DNA of 64,000 nucleotides from IMGVR_UViG_3300042515_001753:1-64000; one strand, 5' to 3'; numbered from the stretch's first letter, positions 11,775 through 37,922 are shown. The notes: generated by a model not told the origin, from the sequence alone. Numbers and translations are program-made.

Positions 11775-11789
11775 TTAAATAAAAAGGGT

Positions 11790-11911
11790 AAGTATGAGTT
11801 CGGGGGAACGAACTGGTTACATTATGTTCCACGACACCCTCCATCGTGGATATGAGGGATTCTTTACTTCTCGTGATCCCGGTTGGAGAAGACACGGTTC
11901 TTAATCCGTGT
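11790..11911 (-). ncRNA. Structured psbA 5' leader (probably PhotoRC-II-like)
   Basis: Hairpins CACGG/CCGTG, CCACGAT/GTCGTGG (loop GAGGG complementary to upstream CCCTC), AGTTCG/CGAACT; family name from memory. Confidence 0.65.
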
Positions 11912-25386: not shown

Positions 25387-26372
25387 AAGGAAATTTCTTT
25401 TACCACTTTTTTAATTAAAAATTCAATATTTGTATTAGGTTCCCATCCCAAAATTTGTTTTGCTTTTTGATAAGTTCCCTTAGAATATTTATTGGTTTCT
25501 TTTGCAACAATTTGCTTATCGAGTGAATAAAACCCATCGAATAGTTCTGGATAATTATCCCAAAGTTTTGATGCTTCTCTATAAATTGGTTTAATATTTG
25601 TGTTAAACACTTCACAGATATAACTTGCGATTTGATTTACAGAAACAAGTGTCCCCGTACAAACATTAAAGGTATCATCTGGTTTTTTCTCTAAACATAA
25701 ATCAATCAATTTGACAACATCATCAACATGAATATAATCTCTACTCTGTTCACCATTAGAATGTAGTATTGGAGAATTATTATTCATAATTTCCCTAACA
25801 ATATAGTTAATCAAAGGTGGGTGTTTTCTATGAATATCTTGTCTTGGACCAAATACATTAAAAAATCTGAGTGTAGTAACTGGCATACCATAATTTAATC
25901 GGTATGATTCGCAAACTTCCTCAGACATTTTTTTAGATAAAGAATACCAAAGTCTTGGATTTACTTTTAAATCTTCAGTAAAAACTTTTTCTTTATTATT
26001 CTCGTAAACTGCACTTGTACTTGCAAAAATTACATGGGGAACATTCCATTTCCTAGCACATTCAAGAATATTCATTGTGCCAGAAACATTTACATTAATA
26101 GTTTCAACTGCATTAGTTTCACAATCAGGAAGTGCGGTAATAGCGGCAAGATGAATAATACAATCATAATCATCTTTGATTAATTCATTTAGATTAGAAT
26201 TACAAATACTAAGATTATAAAATTTTCCAAAAGTTTCACCGTTAATGGTTAAATTTTCCAAATATCCATTTCTTAAATTATCAATAAATGTAAGTATGTG
26301 TCCTTTTTTATATAAGTAATATCCTAAAGTAGATCCTATTCCACCTGCCGCTCCTGTTAAAAGTATTTTCAT
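25383..26372 (-). CDS. NAD-dependent epimerase/dehydratase
   Basis: LTGAAGGIGS, YSLSK, RFFNVFGP. Confidence 0.9.
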   Translation of the reverse strand: MKILLTGAAGGIGSTLGYYLYKKGHILTFIDNLRNGYLENLTINGETFGKFYNLSICNSNLNELIKDDYDCIIHLAAITALPDCETNAVETINVNVSGTMNILECARKWNVPHVIFASTSAVYENNKEKVFTEDLKVNPRLWYSLSKKMSEEVCESYRLNYGMPVTTLRFFNVFGPRQDIHRKHPPLINYIVREIMNNNSPILHSNGEQSRDYIHVDDVVKLIDLCLEKKPDDTFNVCTGTLVSVNQIASYICEVFNTNIKPIYREASKLWDNYPELFDGFYSLDKQIVAKETNKYSKGTYQKAKQILGWEPNTNIEFLIKKVVKEISL

Positions 26373-27427
26373 TTTAAGAACTCCTTTAAATTATCACTAT
26401 TTCTTGGTATATTAATTGCCTCGCAAGAAGGATATGGATTACTTTTTGCAAAATCATTAATGATCACTCTCTTACAATGAGGTAATCCCATAACTAGTTC
26501 ATCATATAAAATATTTTTTTCTTCTAATTCAGAGACCGTTATATCTTTCATATGTTTTGGTCTACTTGTTGTCAAAATTATTTTTACTTTACCTGATGCA
26601 TATAAAGAATTTAAATAATTAATATTGTCTTGAAGAGGATCGGCATTACCAATATAAGGTGGAAAATGTATAGAAGAGTTTGTTACCAAAGTTCCATCGA
26701 TATCAACAAATAAACACTTATATTGAGATTTATACTTGTTCCAAGATTCAAGCGTTCCCCAATCTTTAAAATTAAAAGTTTTAAGACCATAAAAAGTAGA
26801 ACCAGATAACATCATCTCAAATATAATATGGCTAATATAGCACTCACCTTCCATGTCTTTTAGTTTCTCATAGGTAACACAAAATTCTTTTGCATCAGAG
26901 AAAGCATATCCACCACTGGAAAAAGTAGAACTAATAACTTGTTTTTCTACAATATTAGTTACTATTTCATTAATATCAAGTTCAATATAACTTTTAGTTC
27001 TAGCATTAATATTATCCATATCATTTAAGTCAAAATATGCAATTTGGTTTTTTTCTTCTACCAATTCACATTCATAATATCCATCAGAATCTTTAATAAA
27101 AATGAATCCATCTAATGAATTTTTATTTAAAAAATTATAAACAGTCTCTGACTGAGATTTAGTTTGATTGGATAGTAGAATAATATTTGATTTTTTATTT
27201 AATTGAAGTTCTTCAAGTTCTTCAGTAAAACCTTTTATAAAATTATATTTGTCTTCATGTTCTTGAAGGCAAATAAAATATATACTTTCAAAAAAATCTA
27301 AATTTAATCCTAATATAGATTCCGTAACCATAAATCTATTAGTCATTGGATGTGTTAGCATCCATTTTGGTCTCATATTTGGGAAACGACTAGACCTTCC
27401 CGCCATAGGAATTATTAAAGTCCGCAT
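26369..27427 (-). CDS. Nucleotidyltransferase fused to HAD phosphatase
   Basis: IIPMAGRSSRF..PKW, DWGT, then VDIDGT, TTSR, IIND. Confidence 0.85.
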   Translation of the reverse strand: MRTLIIPMAGRSSRFPNMRPKWMLTHPMTNRFMVTESILGLNLDFFESIYFICLQEHEDKYNFIKGFTEELEELQLNKKSNIILLSNQTKSQSETVYNFLNKNSLDGFIFIKDSDGYYECELVEEKNQIAYFDLNDMDNINARTKSYIELDINEIVTNIVEKQVISSTFSSGGYAFSDAKEFCVTYEKLKDMEGECYISHIIFEMMLSGSTFYGLKTFNFKDWGTLESWNKYKSQYKCLFVDIDGTLVTNSSIHFPPYIGNADPLQDNINYLNSLYASGKVKIILTTSRPKHMKDITVSELEEKNILYDELVMGLPHCKRVIINDFAKSNPYPSCEAINIPRNSDNLKEFLK

Positions 27428-28217
27428 ATAACTTTGACGATTTTACCATTGTATCAAGTATACTTCTTTGATCAGAAAAAGTCAAGTAAGGTTCAATTCT
27501 CAAACTATTCATTGCTTCTAAAATATCAAATTCATCAGTATCAATAAATTTAGAGTATCTATAATAAAGTTGATTCCAGATATGTTTATAAATTTGCTCC
27601 AATCTATTTGACTGTATGTTTTGAGTTTTGATACCCCAGAGATGGTAAAGATCTTGTTTCAATTTGACAAGATCAGAAATAAAACTATCAACATAACAGT
27701 CAAGAAAATCAATAAAAAATAATCTATTTTTATGAAAAATAATATTATTAAAAGTTAAATCTCCATGACAAAAAGTTTTAGGAACATAAACATCTTGCTT
27801 ACCAATTAAAAGTTCAATGTATTCCAAATAATTCTTATAACAAGTTTTATTTTTTAAAAATTTAATTTTTTCATCAATATTTGGTTGAACATTAATCAAT
27901 CGATAGTTTGAAATAAGAGAATCAAAATATTCAAATAAAGTATCAATGACAAATTCTATGTCCTTAATAGAAGATGTAGAAAAAAATTTCACAAAAGATT
28001 TTCCAGGAATGTATTCCATATCAAAATACCCGTCCTGAATATTATGAACTTTGGGGGTATCTATATTCTTTAAAATTCGATGAGAAAATAAAACTTGTTT
28101 ATTAACTTGTAAAGAAAGTCTTGAGTTATAATTGATTGATGAAGAATATTTTCTAAGTACTCTGCTATCAATTAATTCAAGTTTACATCCAGATAATCCT
28201 ACAGAAAAATCTAACAT
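27390..28217 (-). CDS. APH/choline-kinase-like phosphotransferase
   Basis: GLSG, MEYIPG, CHGDLTFNNI, FIDF. Confidence 0.8.
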   Translation of the reverse strand: MLDFSVGLSGCKLELIDSRVLRKYSSSINYNSRLSLQVNKQVLFSHRILKNIDTPKVHNIQDGYFDMEYIPGKSFVKFFSTSSIKDIEFVIDTLFEYFDSLISNYRLINVQPNIDEKIKFLKNKTCYKNYLEYIELLIGKQDVYVPKTFCHGDLTFNNIIFHKNRLFFIDFLDCYVDSFISDLVKLKQDLYHLWGIKTQNIQSNRLEQIYKHIWNQLYYRYSKFIDTDEFDILEAMNSLRIEPYLTFSDQRSILDTMVKSSKLYADFNNSYGGKV

Positions 28218-28260
28218 TGAGGATATTGATAAATTTTATGCTACTTTCATTAGAAATAAT

Positions 28261-29193
28261 TTAAATAATATTTTCCAAATACCACTTATAAGTTGATTGA
28301 ATACCTTCACGAAGACCAATTTTGGGATTCCAACCAAGTGCTTTAATTTTATCCACATTCAAAAGTTTTCTTGGTGTTCCATTTGGTTTTGTTGCATCCC
28401 AATTGATATGACGGTCATAACCAACAACATCAGAAATTGTTTCTGCCAGTTGTTTAATTGTCACATCCTCACCAGTCCCAACATTAATATGTTCTGGATT
28501 ATTATAATTTTTCATAGAAATATAACATGCTTCAGCCAAATCGTCAACATGAAGAAATTCTCTCATAGCAGAACCATCTCCCCATAGTTTCACTTCCCAA
28601 TGTTCGCTATGGTTAAGGGAATTATGAAACTTAGCAATCATCGCAGGAAGAACGTGCCCAGTCTCCCAATCAAAGTTATCATAAGGACCATAAAGATTTG
28701 TAGGCATTAAAGAAATTGCCTTAAACCCATATTGCTTATAATATGCTTGACACATTTTAACGCCAGCAATTTTTGCTATTGCATAAGCATCATTTGTAGG
28801 TTCTAGAGGGCTTGATAATAGTTGATCTTCAGTAATCGGTTGTTTAGCAAGTTTTGGATAAATGCAAGATGAACCAAGAAATAAAAGTTTCTTAACACCA
28901 AAATTATAAGATGAATTAATGATATTATTTTGTATCATTAAGTTATCATATATGAATTCTCCAGGATAATTGTAATTTGCCATAATACCACCAACTTTTG
29001 CAGCGGCAAGAAAAACATATTCAGGTTCTTCTGAGCAAAAATATCTTTCAGTTTCATCTTGATTTGTAAAATCTACATCGTCACGAGTTCCTTTGATGAT
29101 GTTAGTATATCCTTTACTTGCAAGATTTCTGACAATTGCAGATCCAACCATTCCGTTGGCACCTGCAACTAAAATTTTAGAATCACTGTCCAT
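28261..29193 (-). CDS. fcl: GDP-L-fucose synthase
   Basis: [39 protein letters not shown]. Confidence 0.95.
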
Positions 29194-30184
29194 AAATGCA
29201 CATATCCTCAACTAATTGATTAAAAGAAATCTTAGGTTCCCAACCTAATTTTTTCTTTGCCTTAGAGGCATCCCCCAATAAAGTCTCTACTTCAGCAGGT
29301 CTAAAATATTTAGGATTGACTTTAATGACTGCTTTCTTAGTATTCCAATCATATCCCACCTCATCAAGACCTTCACCCATCCATTCAATCTTCATACCAA
29401 AGTAAGGTGCTGCTGCCTCAACGAACTCACGCACCGAGTACTGCTCTCCTGTGGCAATTACATAATCATCTGCCTCATCTTGCTTAAGCATTAACCACAT
29501 CGCCTCTACGAAGTCCTTAGCGTGTCCCCAGTCCCTCTTTGAGTTTAGATTCCCGAGATATAATATATCTTGTTCCCCAGTTGAAATGCGTGATAATCCT
29601 CTAGTGATTTTTCTTGTAACAAAAGTTTCTCCTCTTCTAGGGGATTCGTGATTGAAAAGAATTCCAGAAGATGCATGTAATCCGTAAGATTCTCTGTAGT
29701 TTTTGACGATCCAGTATCCATATAATTTTGCAACTCCATAAGGTGAACGAGGATAAAATGGTGTGGTTTCTTTCTGAGGTATCTCTTGAACTTTACCGAA
29801 CATCTCAGAAGTAGATGCCTGATAAATTCGGGTTTTATTCTCCATACCAAGAAGACGAACTGCCTCAAGAATACGAAGAGTGCCGAGACCATCAACCATA
29901 CCAGTATACTCAGGTATCTCAAAAGACACTTTTACATGACTCTGAGCACCCAGATTATATATTTCATCTGGTTGAACTTGCTGAATAACTCTTACAAGAT
30001 TTGTGGAGTCAGTCAAATCACCATAGTGCAATTTGATTTGATTGTAAATATGATCAATTCTTTGAGTATTGATTTGAGAAGCACGACGAATAATACCATG
30101 AACTTCATATCCTTTCTCTAGGAGAAGTTCGGCAAGATATGATCCGTCTTGACCTGAAATTCCCGAAATTAAAGCAACTTTCAT
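29183..30184 (-). CDS. gmd: GDP-mannose 4,6-dehydratase
   Basis: [39 protein letters not shown]. Confidence 0.97.
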
Positions 30185-30204
30185 ATAAGAACTACTTTTT
30201 TATT

Positions 30205-30239
30205 ATTATAGCAAAAAAGGAGAGTTTATGCAACTCTCC
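30205..30239 (-). promoter_or_regulatory. Terminator with embedded promoter for the glycan operon
   Basis: GGAGAGTT-GCATA-AACTCTCC-T6 overlapping TTGCAT-17-TATAAT. Confidence 0.75.
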
Positions 30240-30293
30240 TTGTATAGCATGTAATAACCCTTTAATCAAGGGGGAGTTGCGCTTCTCCAGGTT

Positions 30294-30388
30294 GCTCGCC
30301 ACCAATTCTTTGACTGGAAATTGGAAACCAGACGGGAGTAACCTCCATCCGCACCAGTCGTCATTTATATCGCCCATACGACAAGGGC
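30294..30388 (-). ncRNA. wcaG-like RNA motif
   Basis: Two pseudoknot-like units each ending in UGGUG, upstream of gmd/fcl; family name from memory. Confidence 0.65.
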
Positions 30389-30412
30389 ATTAAGGGGTCA
30401 TATTTGACTCCA

Positions 30413-30487
30413 CCAGTACTTTTAGAGTCTCTCCGTGACTAAAGGGGGTTCATCACCGACCAGTACTTTTAGAGACTCTCCGTGTCT
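30413..30487 (-). repeat. Two 28-nt direct repeats (30413-30440, 30460-30487)
   Basis: 26/28 identical; the two differences are compensatory in a stem. Confidence 0.9.
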
Positions 30488-30726
30488 TCATCATCGTCTC
30501 TTATATAACAAGGTACTCTATCAGGGTCCAACCATTTAGCATAATTAAAGTCTTCCATAGCAGTCAAGCACTGCATCTGATTATCAAACAGATAGATATC
30601 ATTCCATCGTTTGGTATAATAATCTTTTTTCTGAAGGCGATAATCGGGTTTGTTGTTAAGTTCAATAATACCCTTTTCTACAAACCGATATTCTTCTCGT
30701 TCCAAGAGAACTTTAGATTGAATCAT
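30469..30726 (-). CDS. Hypothetical protein
   Basis: 85-aa ORF, ATGA overlap with the upstream gene. Confidence 0.7.
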   Translation of the reverse strand: MIQSKVLLEREEYRFVEKGIIELNNKPDYRLQKKDYYTKRWNDIYLFDNQMQCLTAMEDFNYAKWLDPDRVPCYIRDDDEDTESL

Positions 30727-30938
30727 TTTACTTCAACAGTTTCAAGGTCCTGAATAAGATAATCAATTAGAATGTCATAGTTATCCAAAGCATCCTCAGA
30801 GAACATTACACCTTCATTTTGATAATATCGACGAATTTTTTTGTAAAGTTTTGGACTCTTTACATCAAGATAAAAATCACCATTCGCGGCGGCACGAAGA
30901 GTACTAAGTTCTTTCTTGAATTTGATAGTCAGAGACAT
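30723..30938 (-). CDS. Hypothetical protein
   Basis: 71 aa; promoter TTGACA-17-TATAAT at 30962-30990. Confidence 0.7.
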   Translation of the reverse strand: MSLTIKFKKELSTLRAAANGDFYLDVKSPKLYKKIRRYYQNEGVMFSEDALDNYDILIDYLIQDLETVEVK

Positions 30939-31014
30939 CGCTTTGATTTGTTTACCTTGTTATTATAGAGTGATTTGAGTTTTATGTCAAGTGTACCAGT
31001 CTCGGAACTGGCAA

Positions 31015-31088
31015 TCGGGCATAGAGGATTTGAACCTCTGACCTTTCCGGCCCAAGCGGAACGCGCTACCAAACTGCGCTAATGCCCG
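31015..31088 (-). tRNA. tRNA-Pro(TGG)
   Basis: Cloverleaf; anticodon loop CTTGGGC. Confidence 0.93.
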
Positions 31089-31132
31089 TATTTCTTTATG
31101 TATAATACCATGACTACCCCATCATGTCAATA

Positions 31133-31215
31133 CGGAAAGAACAGGAATCGAACCTGCGAAGTTTTTACACCCAGCCGCTTTCAAGGCGGTGTCCTCGACC
31201 AACCGGACTCTTTCC
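31133..31215 (-). tRNA. tRNA-Ser(TGA)
   Basis: Cloverleaf with long variable arm; loop CTTGAAA. Confidence 0.9.
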
Positions 31216-31226
31216 AAAATAAGTCC

Positions 31227-31487
31227 TTAACGGACTTCAAAATCAAGTCGTCTTACTTTACGCTGACGCCTTGCTTCTTGAAAGGCAAGGTCTTCATTCG
31301 TAAGAACAGTAGACTTTTCTTTGATACTCATATAGTTTACCATAACGACCTTTGATAAGTCAAGTGCCGCAATATTTTCATTATTACGAATGGTTGCCAT
31401 ATTAGGACATCCACAAGTAATTGTTTTACCAGACTTCCCTTCAATCTCGCTTCCGCAAGGCTTACATCTAACTTTTAAGTTTTCCAT
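31227..31487 (-). CDS. Hypothetical Zn-ribbon protein
   Basis: CxxC..CGC. Confidence 0.7.
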   Translation of the reverse strand: MENLKVRCKPCGSEIEGKSGKTITCGCPNMATIRNNENIAALDLSKVVMVNYMSIKEKSTVLTNEDLAFQEARRQRKVRRLDFEVR

Positions 31488-31499
31488 CGCTATAATTAA

Positions 31500-31943
31500 T
31501 TATTCAGTAAATGATCTTAACATCCAAACTGCTTTTCCGTGAGATTCATTCAAATCGTCAACAAGATTAATAGTTCCTTTTGAGTTTTGTTTCTCTGCTT
31601 CATCGGACACCTCGGTAAGCATCTCAATAATTTTCTTATGGTCTCCCATCAATTGCTCAACCATAGTCTTGGCATCAATAGACTGTGTGCTATTTGACGC
31701 CTGCTCCACTCCAGAGACCTCTGTAATGCGTGTGAGGGTGCTTACAGGTTTCATACCCAGGAATCGCATATGCTCGGTGATACGGTCGATTTCCTCAAAC
31801 ATTTCCTCATATTGCCCACCAAACAAATCGTGATACTCCTTAAAATTGGGTCCAACAACATTCCAGTGATATATCCAAGTTTTATGAAATAAGACGAAAA
31901 GTGATGCCTGTGTATCACTCAATAGTTTGAATAGTTTTTCCAT
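31500..31943 (-). CDS. dps: Dps/ferritin-like DNA-protection protein
   Basis: HWNVVGPNFKEYHDLF..EIDRITE; late promoter 31963-31970. Confidence 0.92.
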   Translation of the reverse strand: MEKLFKLLSDTQASLFVLFHKTWIYHWNVVGPNFKEYHDLFGGQYEEMFEEIDRITEHMRFLGMKPVSTLTRITEVSGVEQASNSTQSIDAKTMVEQLMGDHKKIIEMLTEVSDEAEKQNSKGTINLVDDLNESHGKAVWMLRSFTE

Positions 31944-31971
31944 TACTCAAAGTAGTTTTGAGTATTTATAA

Positions 31972-32044
31972 TGAGCAATCGCAGATTCGAACTGCGGACT
32001 TTCTGAATGTAAATCAGACACTCTAACCGCTGAGTTAATCGCCC
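31972..32044 (-). tRNA. tRNA-Val(TAC)
   Basis: Cloverleaf; loop TTTACAT. Confidence 0.93.
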
Positions 32045-32050
32045 CTAAAG

Positions 32051-32215
32051 TCAAGACTGATTCATCATATATTCTACCGTAGTTGCTATATCATTCATAG
32101 CATCACGGAGATTTTCTCTTTGACCAGATTCTTGTTTACGAATTGGACGAGAACTATCACACAGAGTCCACCTCCACTGATTCATTTCTGAGCAGAACCA
32201 TAGATTTATCTTCAT
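32051..32215 (-). CDS. Small hypothetical protein (54 aa)
   Basis: MKINLWFCSEMNQWRWTL..ESGQRENLRDAMND; read manually. Confidence 0.7.
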   Translation of the reverse strand: MKINLWFCSEMNQWRWTLCDSSRPIRKQESGQRENLRDAMNDIATTVEYMMNQS

Positions 32216-32399
32216 TCTTATAGTGTTCTAACTTAATCCAATTTATAAGAGCATTTACTTCCATCATTTTTTGTTCATCTTGTTTAATGACGATATCAGA
32301 AGGAAGTTCTCCAAAGTTAATGATTAATGGAATTGCAGTTTTATAGTATTCTAATGCTTCTATAGCAAGTTTTCTATCACGTTGAGAAATAAGCGACAT
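32157..32399 (-). CDS. Hypothetical protein
   Basis: MSLISQRDR after an AGGAGG RBS; promoter at 32421-32449. Confidence 0.65.
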   Translation of the reverse strand: MSLISQRDRKLAIEALEYYKTAIPLIINFGELPSDIVIKQDEQKMMEVNALINWIKLEHYKNEDKSMVLLRNESVEVDSV

Positions 32400-32464
32400 A
32401 GACCTCCTAACTCGTTTCTTATTATACGACAAAAGGGAGGTTTCGTCAACCCCCCATATCTATA

Positions 32465-33427
32465 TCAGTTACCGATACGCTTTACGGCAATTCTTGATTT
32501 GTTGAGAATGCTACCGGCAAGAGGAACATAACCCAGATCATCAGCAAGCATTTGTGCCTTAGAACTCAAAGCATAATTGAGTGCCTGTTGAATATCACCA
32601 GTCTTTGCACCATTTCCAGTCTTATAGGCAAGAATCCAAGTCAGAGTGGAGATAGGATATGCACCAGAGGCAGAAGGATTAGGATTTTCGCCAGCAAGAT
32701 TTGCATCCAGTTTGATAGAGTTTAGAGCAATAGCACCAGACTTAGCAGTAGGAAGAACAAACTGCCCTGCCTTATTTTGAACTGCTGCTGTCTGAAGTTT
32801 ATTTGCTTTCACAAATCCGGTATTCACATAACCAATAGAACCAGGAGTGGTCTTAACAGTACCAGAAACACCTTCATTTCCTTTACCACCAATACCAACA
32901 GGCCATTTTACTGACTTACCAACTCCAGGTTTCCAACCACCAAAAGCATCCAGAGAATTAGTAAATGCAAAAGTAGTTCCAGAACCATCAGAACGATGAA
33001 CCACAAGAATAGGTCCAGCAGCACATCCAAGTGCCTTCCAGTTCTTGATGGTTCCAGAAAACACATCTACAGTTTGCTTCTGAGTGAGTTTCAGAGTGCA
33101 TCCAGGTTTGTTATAAGCAACGGCAATAGTTCCACCCACCATAGGAATTTGAACCACGCCACGCTTAACTTTACTTGCCTCTTTTGACGAAATAGGTTCA
33201 TCAGTTGCACCAAAATCGACAGTTCCTGCGACATACTGACGGACACCAGAACCAGAACCAACTGACTGATAATTCACACGATTGCCAGTTTCAGAAGCAT
33301 AACCTTGGAACCAGCGTTGATAGATGGGTGCTGGAAAGGTGGCACCAGCACCATTCAAAGGAGGTCCAGCAAGAGCGGCAACAGGAGCAGCAACCAGACC
33401 AGCAACAATAAGATTTTTGAGTTTCAT
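32465..33427 (-). CDS. pstS: Phosphate ABC transporter substrate-binding protein
   Basis: Signal peptide, GAGATFPAP, YQSVGSGSG, HRSDGSGTT. Confidence 0.97.
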   Translation of the reverse strand: MKLKNLIVAGLVAAPVAALAGPPLNGAGATFPAPIYQRWFQGYASETGNRVNYQSVGSGSGVRQYVAGTVDFGATDEPISSKEASKVKRGVVQIPMVGGTIAVAYNKPGCTLKLTQKQTVDVFSGTIKNWKALGCAAGPILVVHRSDGSGTTFAFTNSLDAFGGWKPGVGKSVKWPVGIGGKGNEGVSGTVKTTPGSIGYVNTGFVKANKLQTAAVQNKAGQFVLPTAKSGAIALNSIKLDANLAGENPNPSASGAYPISTLTWILAYKTGNGAKTGDIQQALNYALSSKAQMLADDLGYVPLAGSILNKSRIAVKRIGN

Positions 33428-33450
33428 AAAAAGTGAATAACTACAGAGTA

Positions 33451-33495
33451 ATTATAAGGTAAAGGAAAGATAAAATCAACTAAGATTTGGTTAAG
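33451..33495 (-). promoter_or_regulatory. Putative pho box and -10 for pstS
   Basis: CTTAACCA-N3-CTTAGTTG plus two degenerate TTTA units at ~11-bp period, then TATAAT. Confidence 0.6.
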
Positions 33496-33497
33496 AC

Positions 33498-33527
33498 AAA
33501 AAAAAGCACCCAAAGAATGGGTGCTTC
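33498..33527 (-). terminator. Terminator after porin
   Basis: AAGCACCCA-TTCTT-TGGGTGCTT + T-tract. Confidence 0.85.
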
Positions 33528-33549
33528 TACTCATATTATGAGTTGTTTA

Positions 33550-35034
33550 TCAGAATGTGAACTTAGTCTGGACTACACCACCCCACTTGCTGGAATCTTG
33601 ATAACGCTGATTGTTATCAACATAGAACAGAGCAGGAGTAATGCTGATGTTATCGGTGACTTGGAACTTGTAGAAGATTTCAAGCAGAGTTGCATCATCT
33701 ACACCAGCGGTTTCGGCAGAAGGTGCTTGACCCAAAGCAATACCAGCAGAGTTACCCTTAGCAAAGACATCGCTCCACTGAAGACCAACCATCCAAGAAT
33801 TGGAATCAGTAGCATCACCCGAACCAGGAGTACCACTTACACCATTATATCCATAAGCAGCAGAAACGGAAGGAACCCAACCAGATTGTTGTGGTTGCCA
33901 ATAAGCATTAAGAGCAACACTATTGGATTCTTGACCAGCAGCAAGAGTACCATTAGCACTCAAGAGACCGTTGTAGGTGCGCGAACGAGTGCCTTCAGTA
34001 CCATAACGGTAACCTACGGCAACACCCCACTGAGGAGCACGATAACCAACTTGAGCAAGCAGGTTCAGAGCACCATCAGCATTGAATACACCAGTTTCGG
34101 AATCATCACCGTTCTGAGCAACATAGTTCAGACCAGCAACAAATCCACCTTGACCTTTCTTGGTAGGTTGTTTCCACTGAGCACCAAAACCAGCACCAGT
34201 TGCCTTGTTATAGACACCGGGAACACCAGAAACAGCAAAGAAGTCAAGAATTTCTGACTTATAAGCAGAAGGAATCCATGCCATCTCGGTATTACGAACC
34301 AGAGGACCAGCAGTTAGAGTTAGACTCTTACTTACAGGGAACTGGTAGTAAAGACGATCGATCTCTACAGTTCTATCGGTAGATTCTGCCTTATCAAGTT
34401 TGAACAAAGAAGAACTAGAACCAAAAGGATCGCTACTGAAGTTACCGGAACGAAGACGAGTACGGAGCAAGTCCTTACCAGTAAACGAGGTATCAAAGTT
34501 CAGACGCAGATCATAGTTGAATGCGGTGTTACCCACATCAGCACCTTTATTGGTTTCAAGACTAGGAACTCCACCAAGCATGAAATTGACTTCACCCTTG
34601 AGTTTAGTAGTGGTAGAGAATTGTGTTGCTTCCAAGTTTCCAACACGGTTCTCCAGACCATCTACACGACCCTTGAGTACTGCAAGTTCACTCTTGAATT
34701 CGTTCAGCAGTCGTTGAAGTTCATCTGTAGTTTCAGTCACACGATCCAAACAGGCATTCAGCAGTGCTGCTGCTTCAAAGCGAGTCATTGCCTGACCACC
34801 TTTGTATGTGCCGTTAGGATAACCAGCAACGCAACCATAACGGTCTACGAGGTTGGTAAGTGCCTGATATGCCCAATCAGTAGGTTGGACATCAGAGAAT
34901 TGAGTAACACTTGTAACCTGTGCTGCCGAAGCATACTTATTGACATCCTCAGTATTGAGTTCTGCAGCGATAGCAGCAGGAGCAACAAGACCCAGAGCAA
35001 CAGGGACGAGCATTAGTTTTTTAAGAAAATTCAT
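33550..35034 (-). CDS. Cyanobacterial outer-membrane porin (Som/OprB-type with SLH domain)
   Basis: FSDVQPTDWAYQAL..YGCVAGYP, TRFEAAALL, QFSTTTKLKGE, terminal Phe. Confidence 0.95.
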   Translation of the reverse strand: MNFLKKLMLVPVALGLVAPAAIAAELNTEDVNKYASAAQVTSVTQFSDVQPTDWAYQALTNLVDRYGCVAGYPNGTYKGGQAMTRFEAAALLNACLDRVTETTDELQRLLNEFKSELAVLKGRVDGLENRVGNLEATQFSTTTKLKGEVNFMLGGVPSLETNKGADVGNTAFNYDLRLNFDTSFTGKDLLRTRLRSGNFSSDPFGSSSSLFKLDKAESTDRTVEIDRLYYQFPVSKSLTLTAGPLVRNTEMAWIPSAYKSEILDFFAVSGVPGVYNKATGAGFGAQWKQPTKKGQGGFVAGLNYVAQNGDDSETGVFNADGALNLLAQVGYRAPQWGVAVGYRYGTEGTRSRTYNGLLSANGTLAAGQESNSVALNAYWQPQQSGWVPSVSAAYGYNGVSGTPGSGDATDSNSWMVGLQWSDVFAKGNSAGIALGQAPSAETAGVDDATLLEIFYKFQVTDNISITPALFYVDNNQRYQDSSKWGGVVQTKFTF

Positions 35035-35093
35035 ATAGTTCGTTAAGAATTACAACTACGAAGTTTATTTAGACCCCCTGATATTTTAGGGGA

Positions 35094-35164
35094 AGCGGAT
35101 ACACGGATTTGAACCGAGGATAAAAGTTTGGAAAACTCTTGTGTTACCACTACACCATATCCGC
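35094..35164 (-). tRNA. tRNA-Gly(TCC)
   Basis: Cloverleaf; loop TTTCCAA. Confidence 0.92.
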
Positions 35165-35166
35165 AA

Positions 35167-35240
35167 TGTTGAGAGTGGAAGGTTTCGCATCCTTCTACTG
35201 TATCCCTTGTCGGGGTGCCTTACTTTTGGCATCACTCTCA
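35167..35240 (-). ncRNA. tRNA-sized cloverleaf RNA without a canonical anticodon arm
   Basis: TGAGAGTG/CACTCTCA, TGCC/GGCA, CCC/GGG, GAAGG/CCTTC. Confidence 0.6.
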
Positions 35241-35291
35241 GCGTACTTCCTTCACACCATGGAATTATAAGACATAATGAGTATTATGTCA

Positions 35292-35362
35292 AGCCCCATA
35301 ACAGAATTGAACTGTTCTCTGCAGTTTACAAAACTGCTGCATCACCACAATGCTTATAGGGC
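35292..35362 (-). tRNA. tRNA-Thr(TGT)
   Basis: Cloverleaf; loop TTTGTAA. Confidence 0.9.
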
Positions 35363-35670
35363 GGATTGTGTAATTCTCTATGGCAGTTAGCACAAACAAG
35401 AATACACTTTTTTGCTTCTTCTCTTTGTTTTTCAAGAGAAAGAGTAGACCCAATTATACCACCTTCCTTTACGGTTGGGTCAAGATGGTGGAAATCTAAT
35501 GCGGCAATGCACTTATTATACCCACATATAGAGCAACAGTTTCCTGCTTCCTCTTTTAGAATAGCAACATTTTTCCTTCTGGTAGCGGATACACGCTCTG
35601 CGCTTTTCTTTGCCCAATCAGGATTTTTTGCTTTTCTTTCAGCATAAGTTCGTGTTTCTATTTTTGCCAT
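35326..35670 (-). CDS. HNH endonuclease in the tRNA cluster
   Basis: CSICGY..ALDFHHLDP..KCILVCANCHRELH; late promoter 35692-35699. Confidence 0.88.
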   Translation of the reverse strand: MAKIETRTYAERKAKNPDWAKKSAERVSATRRKNVAILKEEAGNCCSICGYNKCIAALDFHHLDPTVKEGGIIGSTLSLEKQREEAKKCILVCANCHRELHNPPYKHCGDAAVL

Positions 35671-35706
35671 TATTATTGGTATAACTTTTATTATTTATAC
35701 CGATAA

Positions 35707-35779
35707 CTCCCCCACCTGGACTCGAACCAGGAACACTTTGATTAACAGTCAAATACTCTGCCAATTGAGCTATAGGGGA
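35707..35779 (-). tRNA. tRNA-Asn(GTT)
   Basis: Cloverleaf; loop CTGTTAA. Confidence 0.95.
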
Positions 35780-35783
35780 ATAT

Positions 35784-35898
35784 TGGTAGGAGGGGGAGAA
35801 CAAAGTGACTACCTCATCCCTCTTGCACATCATCTAGACTTTTGGACAGACCAGAGAGAGGTGTTGCACTTCCTACATTTTGATAGAGGCGCCTATCA
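35784..35898 (-). ncRNA. Structured RNA of unknown function ending in CCA
   Basis: GTAGGA/TCCTAC closing stem, ACCTC/GAGGT inner stem; own promoter 35904-35933. Confidence 0.55.
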
Positions 35899-35934
35899 GT
35901 TTATATAGTAACAAACTTTTGAAGGTTTGTCAAG

Positions 35935-36008
35935 CGTCCTTTGAGAGATTCGAACTCCCGACACATAGGTTCGTAGCCTACTGCTCTAATCCACTGAGCT
36001 AAAAGAAC
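35935..36008 (-). tRNA. tRNA-Arg(ACG)
   Basis: Cloverleaf; loop CTACGAA. Confidence 0.93.
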
Positions 36009-36012
36009 AAGG

Positions 36013-36084
36013 CGAAGGGTGAGGGATTTGAACCCCCATCGCAAGGTTTTGGAGACCTGCATCTTACCGTTAGACTAACCCAAC
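36013..36084 (-). tRNA. tRNA-Trp(CCA)
   Basis: Loop CTCCAAA; two U-U mismatches in the acceptor stem. Confidence 0.82.
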
Positions 36085-36106
36085 AAAATTTGGATATAAA
36101 ATCCAA

Positions 36107-36180
36107 TGCCCGATACAGGACTCGAACCTGTAAAACCTTGTTTCTAAGACAAGTATGTATTCCAATTCCATCAATCGGGC
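36107..36180 (-). tRNA. tRNA-Leu(TAG), short variable loop
   Basis: Loop CTTAGAA; 74 nt. Confidence 0.88.
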
Positions 36181-36254
36181 TGGCTGAGAAACTAGGACTC
36201 GAACCTAGATAAACGCCTTCAAAGGGCGGTGTCCTACCATTAGACGATTTCTCA
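36181..36254 (-). tRNA. tRNA-Gln(TTG)
   Basis: Loop CTTTGAA; encoded CCA. Confidence 0.93.
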
Positions 36255-36255
36255 T

Positions 36256-36330
36256 TGGGGTGTCGTGAGGGAATCGAACCCTCGTAGGGAGAATCACAAT
36301 CTCCAGTCTTAACCACTAGACTAACGACAC
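36256..36330 (-). tRNA. tRNA-His(GTG)
   Basis: Loop TTGTGAT; C73, encoded CCA. Confidence 0.92.
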
Positions 36331-36332
36331 AG

Positions 36333-36405
36333 TGGCTGTAGATGGATTCGAACCACCGACGACTTCCGTATGAAAGAAGCGTTCTACCAACTGAACTATA
36401 CAACC
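36333..36405 (-). tRNA. tRNA with CAT anticodon (elongator Met or Ile2)
   Basis: Loop TTCATAC; no initiator features. Confidence 0.88.
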
Positions 36406-36491
36406 TGGTGGAAGATGTTGGATTCGAACCAACGGAGGTTTTATCCTCACGGTTTAGCAAACCGATGCATTAACCGCTCTGCCAATCTTCC
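36406..36491 (-). tRNA. tRNA-Ser(GCT)
   Basis: Loop TTGCTAA; long variable arm; encoded CCA. Confidence 0.92.
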
Positions 36492-36494
36492 AAG

Positions 36495-36585
36495 TGGGGA
36501 GAAGGTGGAATCGAACCACCATTGCCAAAGGACGGAATCGAACCGTCTCTAACACCGTCGTGCTCACCATCCAAGGTGCTCTCCC
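36495..36585 (-). ncRNA. tRNA-like RNA with two T-arms and no anticodon arm
   Basis: GGGAGAG/TTCTCCC; GACGG-TTCGATT-CCGTC and GGTGG-TTCGATT-CCACC. Confidence 0.75.
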
Positions 36586-36588
36586 AAG

Positions 36589-36695
36589 TTGATAAGGGCG
36601 CCTGATTTAAAGTGCGCTTGGGTCGTTTAACTAGGGGACTATTTCACCCTCCTCCCCCGTCACACTAATGTTTGGTGGGGGTGGACCCTTATCAA
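36589..36695 (-). ncRNA. Structured RNA of unknown function (107 nt)
   Basis: Perfect 10-bp terminal stem TTGATAAGGG/CCCTTATCAA spanning the whole spacer. Confidence 0.6.
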
Positions 36696-36767
36696 TAGGA
36701 ATACCCAGATTTGAACTGGAATCTATCGGTTATCAACCGATTGCTCTAACCATTGAGCTATATTCCT
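36696..36767 (-). tRNA. tRNA-Ile(GAT)
   Basis: Loop TTGATAA. Confidence 0.93.
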
Positions 36768-36771
36768 GAGG

Positions 36772-36845
36772 CGGGAACAATTGGATTTGAACCAATAACA
36801 CCTTGTTCTTCAAACAAGTGCTCTACCAATTGGAGCTATGTTCCC
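36772..36845 (-). tRNA. tRNA-Phe(GAA)
   Basis: Loop TTGAAGA. Confidence 0.92.
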
Positions 36846-36849
36846 AAGG

Positions 36850-36923
36850 TCTGAGAGGCAGGATTTGAACCTGCGACTTGAGCGTTCCAAACACCCAGCT
36901 CTACCAAACTGAGCTACTCCCAG
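36850..36923 (-). tRNA. tRNA-Pro(TGG), second divergent copy
   Basis: Loop TTTGGAA; C1-G72, A73. Confidence 0.88.
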
Positions 36924-36926
36924 ATA

Positions 36927-36998
36927 CATTCCTAACGGGATTCGAACCCGTGTTACCTCCTTGAAAGGGAGGTGACCTAACCGCTAGTCGATAGGAAC
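36927..36998 (-). tRNA. tRNA-Glu(TTC)
   Basis: Loop CTTTCAA. Confidence 0.93.
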
Positions 36999-37003
36999 TT
37001 GAT

Positions 37004-37068
37004 TTGAAGGCAGGTGCGGTATCATCCCGAAGGCGTTCCCATGCTCCTTTTACTTTCCTTGCCTCCAA
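37004..37068 (-). ncRNA. Small structured spacer RNA (65 nt)
   Basis: TTGGAGGCA/TGCCTTCAA terminal stem. Confidence 0.45.
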
Positions 37069-37140
37069 CGACCCTAACGAGATTCGAACTCGTGATTCTT
37101 CTTAGACAGAGAAGTATGATAACCACTTCATCATAGGGTC
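37069..37140 (-). tRNA. tRNA-Asp(GTC)
   Basis: Loop CTGTCTA. Confidence 0.9.
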
Positions 37141-37144
37141 AAGG

Positions 37145-37233
37145 TGGGAGAAGAGGGAATTGCACCCCCAACGGTTCTTATGTAACAGTTTTACAGACTG
37201 CCGCCACACATATCTAATAGTAGCCTTTCTCCC
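37145..37233 (-). tRNA. Atypical tRNA-Tyr(GTA)
   Basis: Loop CTGTAAA; enlarged D-arm; T-loop TGCAATT. Confidence 0.8.
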
Positions 37234-37236
37234 AAA

Positions 37237-37309
37237 TGGGTCGTAGAGGAGTTGAACCTCTCTCTACCGGTTAAAAGCCGGGTGCATAAAACCGATCTGC
37301 CAACGACCC
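37237..37309 (-). tRNA. tRNA-Lys(TTT)
   Basis: Loop CTTTTAA. Confidence 0.9.
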
Positions 37310-37331
37310 AAATAATATGGATAAATATTCG

Positions 37332-37385
37332 GTTGTCTAGGTTCTGGTGGAGAGGCAATCCCTCAACCACTTGATTAGAATACCA
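37332..37385 (-). promoter_or_regulatory. tRNA-array leader: extended -10, boxB-like hairpin, boxA-like element
   Basis: TGGTATTCT, hairpin 37347-37370, AGAACCTAGACAAC 37332-37345. Confidence 0.6.
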
Positions 37386-37439
37386 CCGTTTGGTCTCTGG
37401 GGGGAGATTGGTGGGCACTTAGGAAACTGGTACAGGCAA

Positions 37440-37477
37440 CAAAAAAGGGGAGGAAACTTTTGGTTTCTCTCCCCCTT
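37440..37477 (-). terminator. Intrinsic terminator
   Basis: GGGGAG-AGAAAC..GTTTC-CTCCCC + T6. Confidence 0.8.
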
Positions 37478-37503
37478 CTTATTTGCTTTTTATGGATTAC
37501 ATC

Positions 37504-37605
37504 TTACATATGTCTTTCCATATCCGCAAACAGGGGAGAACCCTCAATATGCCAATAGCGGCAATCGAGATTACTAATCTGTTTTGTGGGCATCGGATAA
37601 GACAT
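37504..37605 (-). CDS. 33-aa peptide
   Basis: MSYPMPTKQISNLDCRYWHIEGSPLFADMERHM between TATAAATA (37627-37634) and a terminator. Confidence 0.45.
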   Translation of the reverse strand: MSYPMPTKQISNLDCRYWHIEGSPLFADMERHM

Positions 37606-37658
37606 TGTTTTCGACCTAAGTGTTTTTATTTATAAGACTTTTTTGTTAAAAAGTCAAG

Positions 37659-37732
37659 TGGAGAATATCGGACTCGAACCGATGACATCTTGCTTGCAAA
37701 GCAAGTGCTACTACCAACTGAGCTAATTCCCC
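37659..37732 (-). tRNA. tRNA-Ala(TGC)
   Basis: Loop TTTGCAA; G3-U70. Confidence 0.95.
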
Positions 37733-37735
37733 AAG

Positions 37736-37809
37736 CGTCCCGAGCTGGATTCGAACCAGCGACCCACATCTTAGAAGGATGTTGCACTAATCCGCTGTGC
37801 TATCGGGAC
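37736..37809 (-). tRNA. tRNA-Arg(TCT)
   Basis: Loop CTTCTAA. Confidence 0.95.
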
Positions 37810-37922
37810 ATAAGGAACCTCCCTGTTTGTGCTTCTATGAGAGGCATGGGAGGTGTGGGATTTATAAGAAGTTTGGACCTCCTCCACCCGTGAACCTACT
37901 ATAAGGCATCAGGGTACTAAAG

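What the first reader, a model, noticed from the sequence alone, without database searches (positions are those of the whole stretch)
30294..30487. Four-unit UGGU RNA array upstream of the glycan operon, with internal covariation
Seen: four units each ending in UGGU followed by a G-rich stretch. Units 1 and 2 are 28-nt repeats whose only two differences swap a base pair (AGAC/GTCT versus AGTC/GACT) around an invariant ACGGAGA loop. Units 3 and 4 can form H-type pseudoknots (GCCC/GGGC + GTCGT/ACGAC; CTGG/CCAG + CCAATT/AATTGG). A terminator follows and gmd has its own promoter. Inference: a stand-alone multivalent protein-binding RNA, longer than the wcaG motif as I recall it.
Basis: partly seen in the sequence, partly recalled or inferred. 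Interest (0 to 1): 0.6.

Follow-up and report, generated by a model that had tools for sequence, protein, structure and literature searches.

The report
Tandem wcaG-type pseudoknot RNA array
A cyanophage carries four related small RNA pseudoknot modules in a row: the last two are the known "wcaG RNA" motif of unknown function, and the first two are a diverged, unannotated copy, which suggests a repeated binding platform at the end of an early phage transcript and not a classic riboswitch.

Summary
On the minus strand, 30487→30294 holds four modules. Each is a small H-type pseudoknot, then UGGYG/UGGUC, then (units A–C) a G-rich/C-rich hairpin. Rfam wcaG (RF01761) covers only units C+D (30390→30288, 71.4 bits). 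Units A+B (30487→30394) match no Rfam family, but they are a diverged wcaG copy: in a related locus the equivalent A+B module scores above the wcaG threshold.

In 100 viral contigs chosen only by the wcaG core, 98 carry A- and/or B-type units upstream, and small ORFs are often inserted between units.

The array follows two conserved orphan ORFs driven by a near-consensus promoter. It ends at an intrinsic terminator whose loop holds the −35 box of the gmd promoter. I therefore read it as the 3′ tail of an early transcript carrying reiterated binding sites for a trans factor (inferred, untested). It does not look like a stand-alone gene or a 5′-UTR riboswitch. Expression could not be checked.

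Verdict: a new variant of a known orphan motif, of moderate interest.

The parts
30962..30990 (-). Sigma-70-type promoter (TTGACA-17-TATAAT) upstream of the two small ORFs; likely start of the transcript that carries the array
   Evidence: 12/12 consensus match. The equivalent TTGAC(T/A)-N16-18-TATAAT is present in 121/122 unique homologous upstream regions, against 7/122 shuffled controls.
30723..30938 (-). ORF 'p249' (71 aa), a conserved cyanomyovirus orphan (phrog_552; 'T4-like GC 249' in S-SM2)
   Evidence: AF2 model all-helical, pLDDT 85. No informative fold match.
30469..30726 (-). ORF 'p250' (85 aa), a conserved orphan (phrog_481; 'T4-like GC 250'). Its stop codon UAA (30471-30469) lies inside the linker of unit A.
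   Evidence: AF2 model with four strands and two helices, pLDDT 81. Best PDB matches Z<5.
30444..30487 (-). Unit A: S1 AGAC (30487-30484) / GUCU (30476-30473); loop ACGGAGA; linker CUAAAAGUA; CUGGUCGG (30463-30456); G...C-run tail. Pseudoknot pair C30482-G30466.
   Evidence: S1 covariation and the loop-linker pair C-G 46 / U-A 13. 83/84 unique heads paired, 0/2000 permutations as good.
30394..30440 (-). Unit B: S1 AGUC (30440-30437) / GACU (30429-30426); loop ACGGAGA; linker CUAAAAGUA; CUGGUGGAGUC (30416-30406); hairpin-like tail ending GACCCC (30399-30394)
30331..30388 (-). Unit C (wcaG P1/P2): S1 GCCC (30388-30385) / GGGC (30375-30372); S2 GUCGU (30382-30378) / ACGAC (30361-30357); UGGUGCGGAUGG (30356-30345); P2 hairpin to 30331
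   Evidence: Rfam alignment. S2 94.5% paired with compensations at 6/7 pairs. S1 of at least 3 bp in 76/97 unique C heads, against a control mean of 25.
30294..30331 (-). Unit D (wcaG P3 plus the known pseudoknot): S1 CUGG (30331-30328) / CCAG (30317-30314); S2 CCAAUU (30324-30319) / AAUUGG (30307-30302); UGGCGAGC (30301-30294)
   Evidence: both helices 100% paired; compensations at 3/4 and 4/6 pairs. The pseudoknot is already in the discoverers' SS_cons_1.
30288..30390 (-). Extent of the Rfam wcaG RNA (RF01761) match; equals units C+D
   Evidence: 71.4 bits against gathering score 42, model 1-98.
30211..30241 (-). Intrinsic-terminator-like hairpin (30241-30217) plus U-run; ends the transcript that carries the array
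   Evidence: An equivalent hairpin plus U-run lies 15-25 nt after UGGCG in 127/136 unique arrays.
30205..30233 (-). Promoter-like site for gmd: -35-like TTGCAT (30233-30228) in the terminator loop, 17-nt spacer, TATAAT (30210-30205). A composite terminator/promoter.
   Evidence: Read. Of the 127 terminator-bearing arrays among 136 unique ones, 94 have a -10-like hexamer (TATAAT in 92) just after the hairpin, and 85 of those have TTGnnn 16-18 nt upstream.
29183..30184 (-). gmd (GDP-mannose 4,6-dehydratase), first gene of the glycan cluster downstream
   Evidence: Pfam PF16363, E 3.8e-153.

Best explanation
The region is a four-module structured RNA made of two tandem copies of the two-unit wcaG motif.

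Shown:
- Each module is a compact H-type pseudoknot: stem S1, stem S2 and an A-rich crossing linker. The UGGYG core (UGGUC in unit A) follows directly, and in units A-C a G-rich/C-rich hairpin comes next.
- Modules are self-contained. In relatives they change order and number, and small ORFs are inserted between them.
- The array sits 3' of two conserved orphan ORFs that have a near-consensus early-type promoter. It is closed by an intrinsic terminator that overlaps the promoter of the downstream glycan genes.

Inferred:
- The array is transcribed early, as the untranslated tail of that short transcript, and may later be processed from it.
- It works as a multivalent platform. The four pseudoknot-presented UGGYG sites are bound by several copies or subunits of one trans factor, most likely a protein. 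That would either titrate the factor or assemble it on the RNA next to the terminator.
- The binding partner and the consequence of binding are unknown.
For: - Rfam wcaG covers units C+D only.
- The A+B module of L140 scores 48.4 bits on the wcaG model, across model positions 1-98. Rows of the original seed alignment align A/B-type units as wcaG.
- The order A-B-C-D holds in 60/83 loci chosen by the upstream ORF.
- 98/100 loci chosen only by the wcaG core carry A and/or B upstream: A~B-C-D in 22, A-B-C-D in 20, A-B~C-D in 10.
- Covariation supports S1 of A and B, the loop-linker pairs, the S1 stem of C and D and the S2 stems of C and D.
- ORFs inserted between units start just after the A tail and stop inside the next unit's A-rich loop. 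A single cooperative aptamer should not tolerate this.
- Promoter upstream of p249 in 121/122 loci. Terminator after the array in 127/136 loci. Among those 127, a -10-like hexamer follows the hairpin in 94 (TATAAT in 92), and 85 of these have TTGnnn 16-18 nt upstream.
- The discoverers noted that duplicated UGGYG could be sites for a dimeric protein.
Against: - Co-transcription, processing and stability are inferred from promoter and terminator anatomy only.
- No binding partner is identified. The two adjacent orphan proteins show no recognisable RNA-binding fold, and no CsrA is encoded in the 68%-complete phage record.
- The invariant UGGYG cores could be paired inside the RNA. RNAalifold pairs A's GGUC with B's GACC and A's C-run with B's GGUGG, but all of these are invariant, so this is untestable.
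- The first gene downstream is a sugar-nucleotide or glycan gene in roughly four of five arrays by cluster size; only the window's own genes were checked against Pfam. This fits a cis-regulatory role equally well.
Confidence: 0.45

Rival explanations
1. Cis-acting riboswitch or attenuator, the original classification. One or more units bind a metabolite, for example a nucleotide sugar, and set how much transcription from the upstream promoter reads through the terminator at 30241-30217 into gmd and the glycan genes. Tandem units would sharpen the response.
For: - The discoverers rated wcaG as probably cis-regulatory and a possible riboswitch.
- The first ORF after the array is a sugar-nucleotide or glycan gene in most loci: 70 SDR epimerase/dehydratase and 35 cytidylyltransferase-like of 159.
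- A terminator follows 15-25 nt after unit D in 127/136 arrays.
- Compact H-type pseudoknots with A-rich linkers are a known aptamer design (preQ1-I, SAM-II; my own knowledge).
- In this window only, 30280-30271 can pair with the terminator's 5' arm (I4).
Against: - The terminator does not overlap unit D.
- Unit D's tail stays constant while the terminator stems vary, judged by eye across the loci and not counted.
- Downstream genes have their own promoter inside the terminator, so most of their transcripts would lack the array.
- In S-CREM1 the array is followed by a promoter and tRNA genes, not glycan genes.
- ORFs of about 75 aa split the array between units in about a third of loci.
- No ligand is known.
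Confidence: 0.25
2. Intercistronic punctuation. Each unit is an mRNA-level boundary element that marks ORF ends, blocks exonucleases or guides endonucleolytic processing, and couples termination of one ORF to initiation of the next. The array is then a stack of such boundaries left where cassettes were lost.
For: - Stop codons of upstream ORFs fall inside units: p250 UAA in the linker of A here, UAG in the 5' arm of S1 in other lineages, and the inserted ORF's UAA in the A-rich loop of the next unit.
- GGGAG of the A tail lies about 10 nt before the AUG of the inserted ORF.
- Units change order and number.
- A vestigial A head survives where the array is deleted (L008).
Against: - In the 146-kb phage record the loose A/B-type linker-plus-anchor pattern occurs only at this one locus, so the units are not general boundary signals.
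- About a fifth of arrays (20/100) have four contiguous units with no ORF between them.
- The strongly conserved UGGYG core and bulged GG are not needed for a simple protective hairpin.
Confidence: 0.15
3. DNA-level element. The repeated CTGGTSG-containing units act as recombination joints for cassette shuffling (PeSL-like), or as Chi-like sequences, and have no RNA function.
For: - ORF cassettes are inserted or deleted exactly between units.
- The adjacent terminator/promoter composite resembles the PeSLs described for T4-type phages.
- CTGGTGG is 7/8 of the E. coli Chi octamer (my own knowledge).
Against: - Compensatory base changes keep four different helices and a loop-linker pair intact. 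This points to selection on a folded single strand.
- The cores differ (UGGUC, UGGUG, UGGCG), so there is no single octamer.
- CTGGTSGG is not enriched in the window: 4 found against 1.55 expected.
Confidence: 0.03

Closest known systems
wcaG RNA motif (Rfam RF01761; Weinberg et al. 2010, PMC2864571)
   Same: Units C+D are a full-length member at 71.4 bits. They share hairpins P1-P3, the P3 pseudoknot and the two UGGYG sites. They occur in T4-like cyanophages, upstream of nucleotide-sugar genes.
   Different: The window carries a second, diverged copy (units A+B) directly upstream, which the Rfam model does not detect. Its heads are a compact 4-bp stem with a 7-nt N-Y-G-G-N-N-N loop that pseudoknots with the linker. 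Unit C also forms a pseudoknot that is not in the published consensus. The published description treats wcaG as one two-site, probably cis-regulatory motif. Here it is a modular array of 3-5 units lying 3' of conserved ORFs.
Multi-site protein-sponge RNAs (CsrB/RsmZ type)
   Same: Reiterated short G-rich motifs are presented by small structures on one non-coding RNA that ends at an intrinsic terminator. Many A/B loops contain GGA.
   Different: There is no sequence or Rfam relation. The units here are pseudoknots with a UGGYG core. No CsrA is encoded in the phage record. The resemblance is functional analogy only.
Small H-type pseudoknot aptamers (preQ1-I, SAM-II) and tandem riboswitches (glycine)
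   Same: Each unit is about 35-45 nt, with two short stems, an A-rich linker crossing stem 1, and conserved unpaired purines. The units are arranged in tandem.
   Different: There is no Rfam similarity, no ligand and no expression platform overlapping the units. The units tolerate being separated by ORFs.
PeSL promoter-terminator cassettes of T4-type phages (PMC2839356, PMC4122927)
   Same: The element at 30241-30205 is a stem-loop/terminator fused to a sigma-70-like promoter. It lies at a boundary where gene cassettes vary.
   Different: PeSLs were described for phages of enterobacteria, vibrios and related hosts, and cyanophages are not mentioned in the 2014 paper. The four-unit array itself is not a PeSL.

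Membership tests
wcaG RNA (RF01761), units C+D | Covariance-model score at or above the gathering threshold over the full model | tested here: met
   71.4 bits against 42, model 1-98, 30390->30288 on the minus strand.
wcaG RNA (RF01761), units C+D | Two UGGYG sites, and the pseudoknot between the linker before P3 and the P3 loop | tested here: met
   UGGUG at 30356 and UGGCG at 30301. CUGG/CCAG is 100% paired across 40 arrays, with compensatory changes at 3/4 pairs. These features are listed in the discoverers' files.
wcaG RNA (RF01761), units A+B | Covariance-model score at or above the gathering threshold | tested here: not met
   No second wcaG hit in 30100-30750, even at E<=10. The equivalent module passes in 1 of 20 related loci (L140, 48.4 bits). 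A/B-type rows also occur in the original seed alignment. The units are therefore homologous but outside the current model's reach.
Riboswitch (cis-acting metabolite sensor) | Located in the 5' UTR of the regulated gene, on the same transcript | tested here: inconclusive
   The array is 3' of two ORFs. A terminator and a separate promoter-like site separate it from gmd. Read-through transcripts are possible but were not measured.
Riboswitch (cis-acting metabolite sensor) | Expression platform (terminator or SD) that overlaps or competes with the aptamer | tested here: not met
   The terminator starts 15-25 nt after UGGCG in 118 of the 127 terminator-bearing arrays, and about 55 nt after it here. 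Unit D's tail is constant while the terminator stems vary, as read by eye across the loci.
Riboswitch (cis-acting metabolite sensor) | Specific ligand binding | not testable with these tools
   Needs in-line probing or ITC. No ligand is reported in the literature searched.
Protein-sponge / multivalent protein-binding RNA | Several copies of one short motif, each displayed in a similar structural context | tested here: met
   Four UGGY(G/C) cores, each directly 3' of a pseudoknot. The motif is conserved across roughly 200 loci.
Protein-sponge / multivalent protein-binding RNA | An identified binding protein and a titration effect | not testable with these tools
   The neighbouring orphan proteins gave no RNA-binding signal. 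No CsrA was found.
PeSL promoter-terminator composite | Stem-loop/terminator physically overlapping an early sigma-70-like promoter at a cassette boundary | tested here: met
   This applies to 30241-30205 only. TTGCAT lies in the hairpin loop, followed by 17 nt and TATAAT. The same layout is seen in 85/136 unique arrays.
T-box-like tRNA 3'-end sensor | Specifier loop, stem I platform and T-box antiterminator with a UGGN bulge | tested here: not met
   No T-box hit in Rfam at E<=10. Only the UGGN-like core is shared.

The most novel reading that the evidence does not exclude
The array is a trans-acting decoy RNA. It is made at high level from a near-consensus early promoter, released at its own terminator, and displays four or more pseudoknot-mounted UGGYG sites that capture a host factor early in infection. 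One speculative target is the single-stranded CRCCA-3' end of tRNAs, to which UGGYG is complementary as in the UGGN of T-box leaders. The array nearly always sits beside the phage tRNA cluster. A host RNA-binding protein or RNase is the more conventional target.
Probability: 0.2. Interest if true: 0.75.

Novelty: new variant of a known kind. Interest (0 to 1): 0.5.

Why it matters
wcaG RNA has been an orphan "riboswitch candidate" since 2010, and it is annotated in cyanophage genomes as a cis-regulator of exopolysaccharide genes.

This analysis changes what should be tested:
- The 98-nt Rfam motif is only the downstream half of a longer array.
- That array is built from one repeated pseudoknot–UGGYG module.
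- It sits at the 3′ end of a strongly promoted early transcript, in front of a terminator/promoter composite.

These points favour searching for a multimeric binding partner over searching for a metabolite. Constructs for probing should include all units. The Rfam model and genome annotations miss half of the element. The compact A/B heads also give a small, well-covaried pseudoknot with a bulged GG, which would suit structural work.

Tried and rejected
- Thermodynamic signal: the MFE z-score of the 207-nt array is −0.45, which is not significant. The support comes from covariation, not from energy.
Only 2 are real arrays, both on low-GC MAG contigs (L242, L287). The rest are chance matches in high-GC genomes. 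This served as a negative control and is not evidence of a host copy.
- p249 and p250 as the binding proteins: Pfam gave nothing, and PHROGs gave "unknown function". The AF2 models are confident, but Foldseek found no match at E ≤ 0.001 and the best VIA Z-scores were 4.8 and 5.2. The Atlas gave only unnamed viral clusters. A weak PC4-like resemblance for p250 (Z 4.2) is not usable.
- CsrA-type partner: not encoded in the 68%-complete phage record.
- Internal promoter for a stand-alone RNA: a 9/12 match at 30567–30538 lies inside the p250 coding sequence. It is absent from S-SM2 and Bellamy; other loci were not checked.
- Antiterminator pairing between unit D's tail (GGCGAG) and the terminator's 3′ arm: the tail is constant while the terminator stems vary, judged by eye across the loci, so there is no covariation.
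- Long-range pairing of A's GGUC with B's GACC: all partners are invariant, so it cannot be judged.
- Glutamine-riboswitch, guanidine-II (ACGR loops) and T-box resemblances: no Rfam hit at E ≤ 10.
- Chi-like DNA reading: rejected on covariation and lack of enrichment.
- Coding potential of the overlapping ORFs 30139–30393 (+) and 30192–30377 (−): the aligned arrays show indels that are not multiples of three in loop regions, so these ORFs are probably spurious.

Full report
**What the window is.** The window comes from a T4-like cyanomyovirus. The best DNA matches are Synechococcus and Prochlorococcus phages of the Kyanoviridae. It holds a cluster of more than 20 tRNA genes, PhotoRC-II and group I introns. 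The record is a 146-kb viral contig estimated at 68% complete. Everything discussed here is on the minus strand.

**Checking the observation.**
- Unit A (30487–30444) has stem AGAC/GUCU around the loop ACGGAGA, then CUAAAAGUA, then CUGGUCGG and a C-run.
- Unit B (30440–30394) has stem AGUC/GACU around the same loop and linker, then CUGGUGGAGUC…GACCCC.
- The two heads form a 29-nt direct repeat with two differences. Those two differences are the two sides of one base pair.
- Unit C (30388–30331) can form GCCC/GGGC plus GUCGU/ACGAC before UGGUGCGGAUGG.
- Unit D (30331–30294) can form CUGG/CCAG plus CCAAUU/AAUUGG before UGGCGAGC.
- A terminator-like hairpin with a U-run follows at 30241–30217.
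- The hairpin loop holds TTGCAT. Seventeen bases further on lies TATAAT (30210–30205), 20 nt before the gmd start codon.

**Relation to Rfam.** The wcaG model (RF01761) matches 30390→30288 over its whole length at 71.4 bits, against a gathering score of 42.

**Is the extension real and conserved?** I fetched 80 IMG/VR loci through the ORF that ends in unit A, and 120 loci through a pattern specific to unit C alone.
- In the first set, the four signature cores occur in the order A-B-C-D in 60 of 83 loci, and never upstream of the ORF.
- In the second set, which is unbiased with respect to A and B, 114 of 119 loci with enough upstream sequence carry A and/or B within 1.5 kb.
- Of the 100 loci with at least 1 kb of context, only 2 lack them. 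The commonest layouts are A~B-C-D (22), A-B-C-D (20), A-B~C-D (10) and B-A-C-D (6), where "~" marks an inserted stretch of 90–450 nt.
- As a control, 118 chance matches of the same pattern in bacterial genomes show no such neighbours. The two genuine arrays found there lie on low-GC MAG contigs.
- In the window's own 146-kb record, a loose pattern for the A/B-type linker plus core matches only at these two units.

**What A and B are.** They are a diverged copy of the wcaG two-unit motif.
- In L140 the A+B module, which lies about 340 nt upstream of that locus's C+D, scores 48.4 bits on the Rfam wcaG model across positions 1–98.
- Several rows of the discoverers' own Stockholm alignment align an A-type head plus CUGGUCGGGAUGG and a B-type tail as "wcaG". 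Some scaffolds are hit twice about 100 nt apart.
- The tandem, modular nature was thus present in their data but was not described. Later papers repeat only the cis-regulatory annotation.

**One module design for all four units.** Pooling 84 unique A/B-type heads shows a 4-bp stem S1 with several compensatory versions: AGUC/GACU, AGAC/GUCU, CGUC/GACG, CGUG/CACG and UGCC/GGCA.
- The 7-nt loop reads N-Y-G-G-N-N-N.
- Loop position 2 pairs with the third base before CUGG in 83 of 84 heads (C-G 58, U-A 25; 0 of 2000 permutations as good).
- Where the linker is longer, loop position 5 pairs with the fourth base before CUGG (A-U 25, G-C 22, U-A 6). Further pairs appear in longer variants.
- The tool count on a MAFFT alignment of 63 A+B modules agrees: 93% of cells are paired, 8 of 10 pairs show double changes, and 0 of 500 shuffles reach the observed covariation score.

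Units A and B are therefore H-type pseudoknots with a bulged GG and an A-rich crossing linker, not simple hairpins.

Units C and D have the same topology with a longer second stem: S1(5′)–UUU–S2(5′)–S1(3′)–A-rich linker–S2(3′)–UGGYG.
- For D, S1 is the pseudoknot already annotated by the discoverers. It is 100% paired across 40 arrays, with compensatory changes at 3 of 4 pairs.
- Across unique sequences, D's S1 takes the forms CUGG/CCAG, CCUG/CAGG, CAGG/CCUG, CUAG/CUAG, AUAG/CUAU and others. It is present in 57 of 62, against a control mean of 14.
- For C, an S1 of at least 3 bp is found in 76 of 97 unique heads, against a control mean of 25 and maximum of 40. It varies as GAG/CUC, AGG/CCU, UGG/CCA and the window's own GCCC/GGGC.
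- Heads and tails are interchangeable between units. For example, B tails occur behind C/D-type heads when an ORF precedes them.

**Context.**
- Unit A overlaps the stop codon of an 85-aa ORF (p250). That ORF overlaps a 71-aa ORF (p249).
- Both are conserved cyanomyovirus orphans (phrog_481 and phrog_552; "T4-like GC 250/249" in S-SM2).
- Of the 120 loci chosen by the wcaG core, 83 have p250 upstream of the array, usually ending just before the first unit. In at least ten of the others p249 ends just before the first unit.
- Upstream of p249, 121 of 122 unique sequences carry TTGAC(T/A)–N16–18–TATAAT ending 20–24 nt before the ATG, against 7 of 122 shuffled. The window's copy at 30990–30962 is a 12/12 consensus match.
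- Downstream, 127 of 136 unique arrays are followed by a terminator-like hairpin plus U-run, and in 118 of these it starts 15–25 nt after UGGCG. Among those 127, 94 have a −10-like hexamer just after the hairpin (TATAAT in 92), and 85 of the 94 have TTGnnn, mostly TTGCAT, 16–18 nt upstream of it. In the window this TTGCAT lies in the hairpin loop.
- This composite resembles the PeSL cassettes of other T4-type phages.
- The first ORF after the array belongs to an SDR epimerase/dehydratase cluster in 70 of 159 loci and to a cytidylyltransferase-like cluster in 35. The smaller clusters look mostly glycan-related, judged by N-terminal sequence; only the window's own genes were checked against Pfam. 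In S-CREM1, however, a promoter and tRNA genes follow the array.
- Where ORFs are inserted between units, they start a few bases after the tail of the preceding unit and end inside the A-rich loop of the next. An example is L030, ORF 794–1021.

**Interpretation.** The anatomy defines a short early transcription unit: promoter, p249, p250, four-unit array, terminator. The array is the 3′ untranslated part of that unit, and no conserved promoter of its own was found. It is not a typical 5′-UTR riboswitch for three reasons. The terminator does not overlap it. The downstream genes have their own promoter. The units tolerate being separated by ORFs.

The repeated display of one short conserved core on four equivalent scaffolds is what a multivalent binding platform would look like. 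I take that as the most likely mode of action (confidence about 0.45). The partner and the outcome are unknown.

The main rival is a read-through attenuator or riboswitch for the glycan genes (0.25). Next comes a role as intercistronic boundary or stability elements (0.15). A purely DNA-level role is disfavoured by the covariation (0.03).

A speculative reading worth recording: UGGYG is complementary to the CRCCA-3′ end of tRNAs, as is the UGGN of T-box leaders. The array also nearly always lies beside the phage tRNA cluster. No T-box features were found.

**What failed.**
- The two orphan proteins fold confidently (pLDDT 81 and 85) but match nothing informative.
- The MFE z-score is not significant.
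- RNAalifold proposes long-range pairing between invariant segments of A and B, which cannot be evaluated.

**Verdict.** It is a new variant and extension of a known orphan motif. It is of moderate interest because it redefines what should be tested to find the motif's function.

Noticed in passing
window 9989-11904 (- strand): psbA appears to be split by three group I introns. The Rfam hits are at 11479-11242, 10667-10441 and 10366-10114. D1 exon-like frames lie at 11774-~11480, 11241-~10668, ~10434-10367 and 10084-9989, and PhotoRC-II lies at 11904-11814. A 232-aa open frame (stop to stop) follows at 9983-9285 and could be a homing endonuclease. As I recall, one intron is known in S-PM2 psbA, so three would be unusual.
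   Followed up: partly
window 30242-30293 (- strand), especially 30280-30271: Between unit D and the terminator this phage has about 35 nt more spacer than the typical array, as do the identical contigs L004-L006. Part of the spacer (GCAACUCCCC) is 90% complementary to the terminator's 5' arm and loop (30239-30230), so it could act as an antiterminator here. It is absent from the other loci I read.
   Followed up: partly
window 31015-37853 (- strand): There are 23 tRNA matches directly upstream of the p249 promoter, and an abiF RNA motif hit at 37853-37817. In related loci the array is almost always next to tRNA genes, sometimes on both sides (L120, S-CREM1).
   Followed up: partly
L030:794-1021; also L031-L034, L051, L059, L060, L078, L079, L083: A 75-aa hydrophobic ORF (phrog_2318, unknown function) is inserted precisely between units A and B in about a fifth of arrays. 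S-SM2 and Bellamy instead carry a 64-66-aa ORF between B and C that looks like a coiled coil, and other loci carry yet other small ORFs.
   Followed up: partly
window 30469-30938 (- strand): p249 and p250 are conserved orphans that almost always precede the array. They give confident AF2 models (pLDDT 85 and 81) with no PDB match above Z 5.2. Their tight linkage to the RNA makes them candidates for a functional partnership, but nothing tested here supports or excludes that.
   Followed up: partly
L008:1725-1860 (and L009, L010): In a few relatives the array is missing. Only a degenerate unit-A head survives, as the C-terminal codons of p250, and the terminator/promoter composite follows directly. 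This shows the array can be lost as a block.
   Followed up: no
window 26369-30184 (- strand): The downstream cluster is gmd (PF16363), a second SDR epimerase/reductase (a GDP-fucose-synthase-like candidate), a kinase-like protein (weak APH/choline-kinase hits) and a 352-aa protein with a faint HAD-like hit. This looks like a phage-borne nucleotide-sugar pathway.
   Followed up: partly
window 31500-31943 (- strand): A ferritin-like domain protein (PF00210, E 2e-23) is encoded within the window's tRNA-rich region.
   Followed up: no
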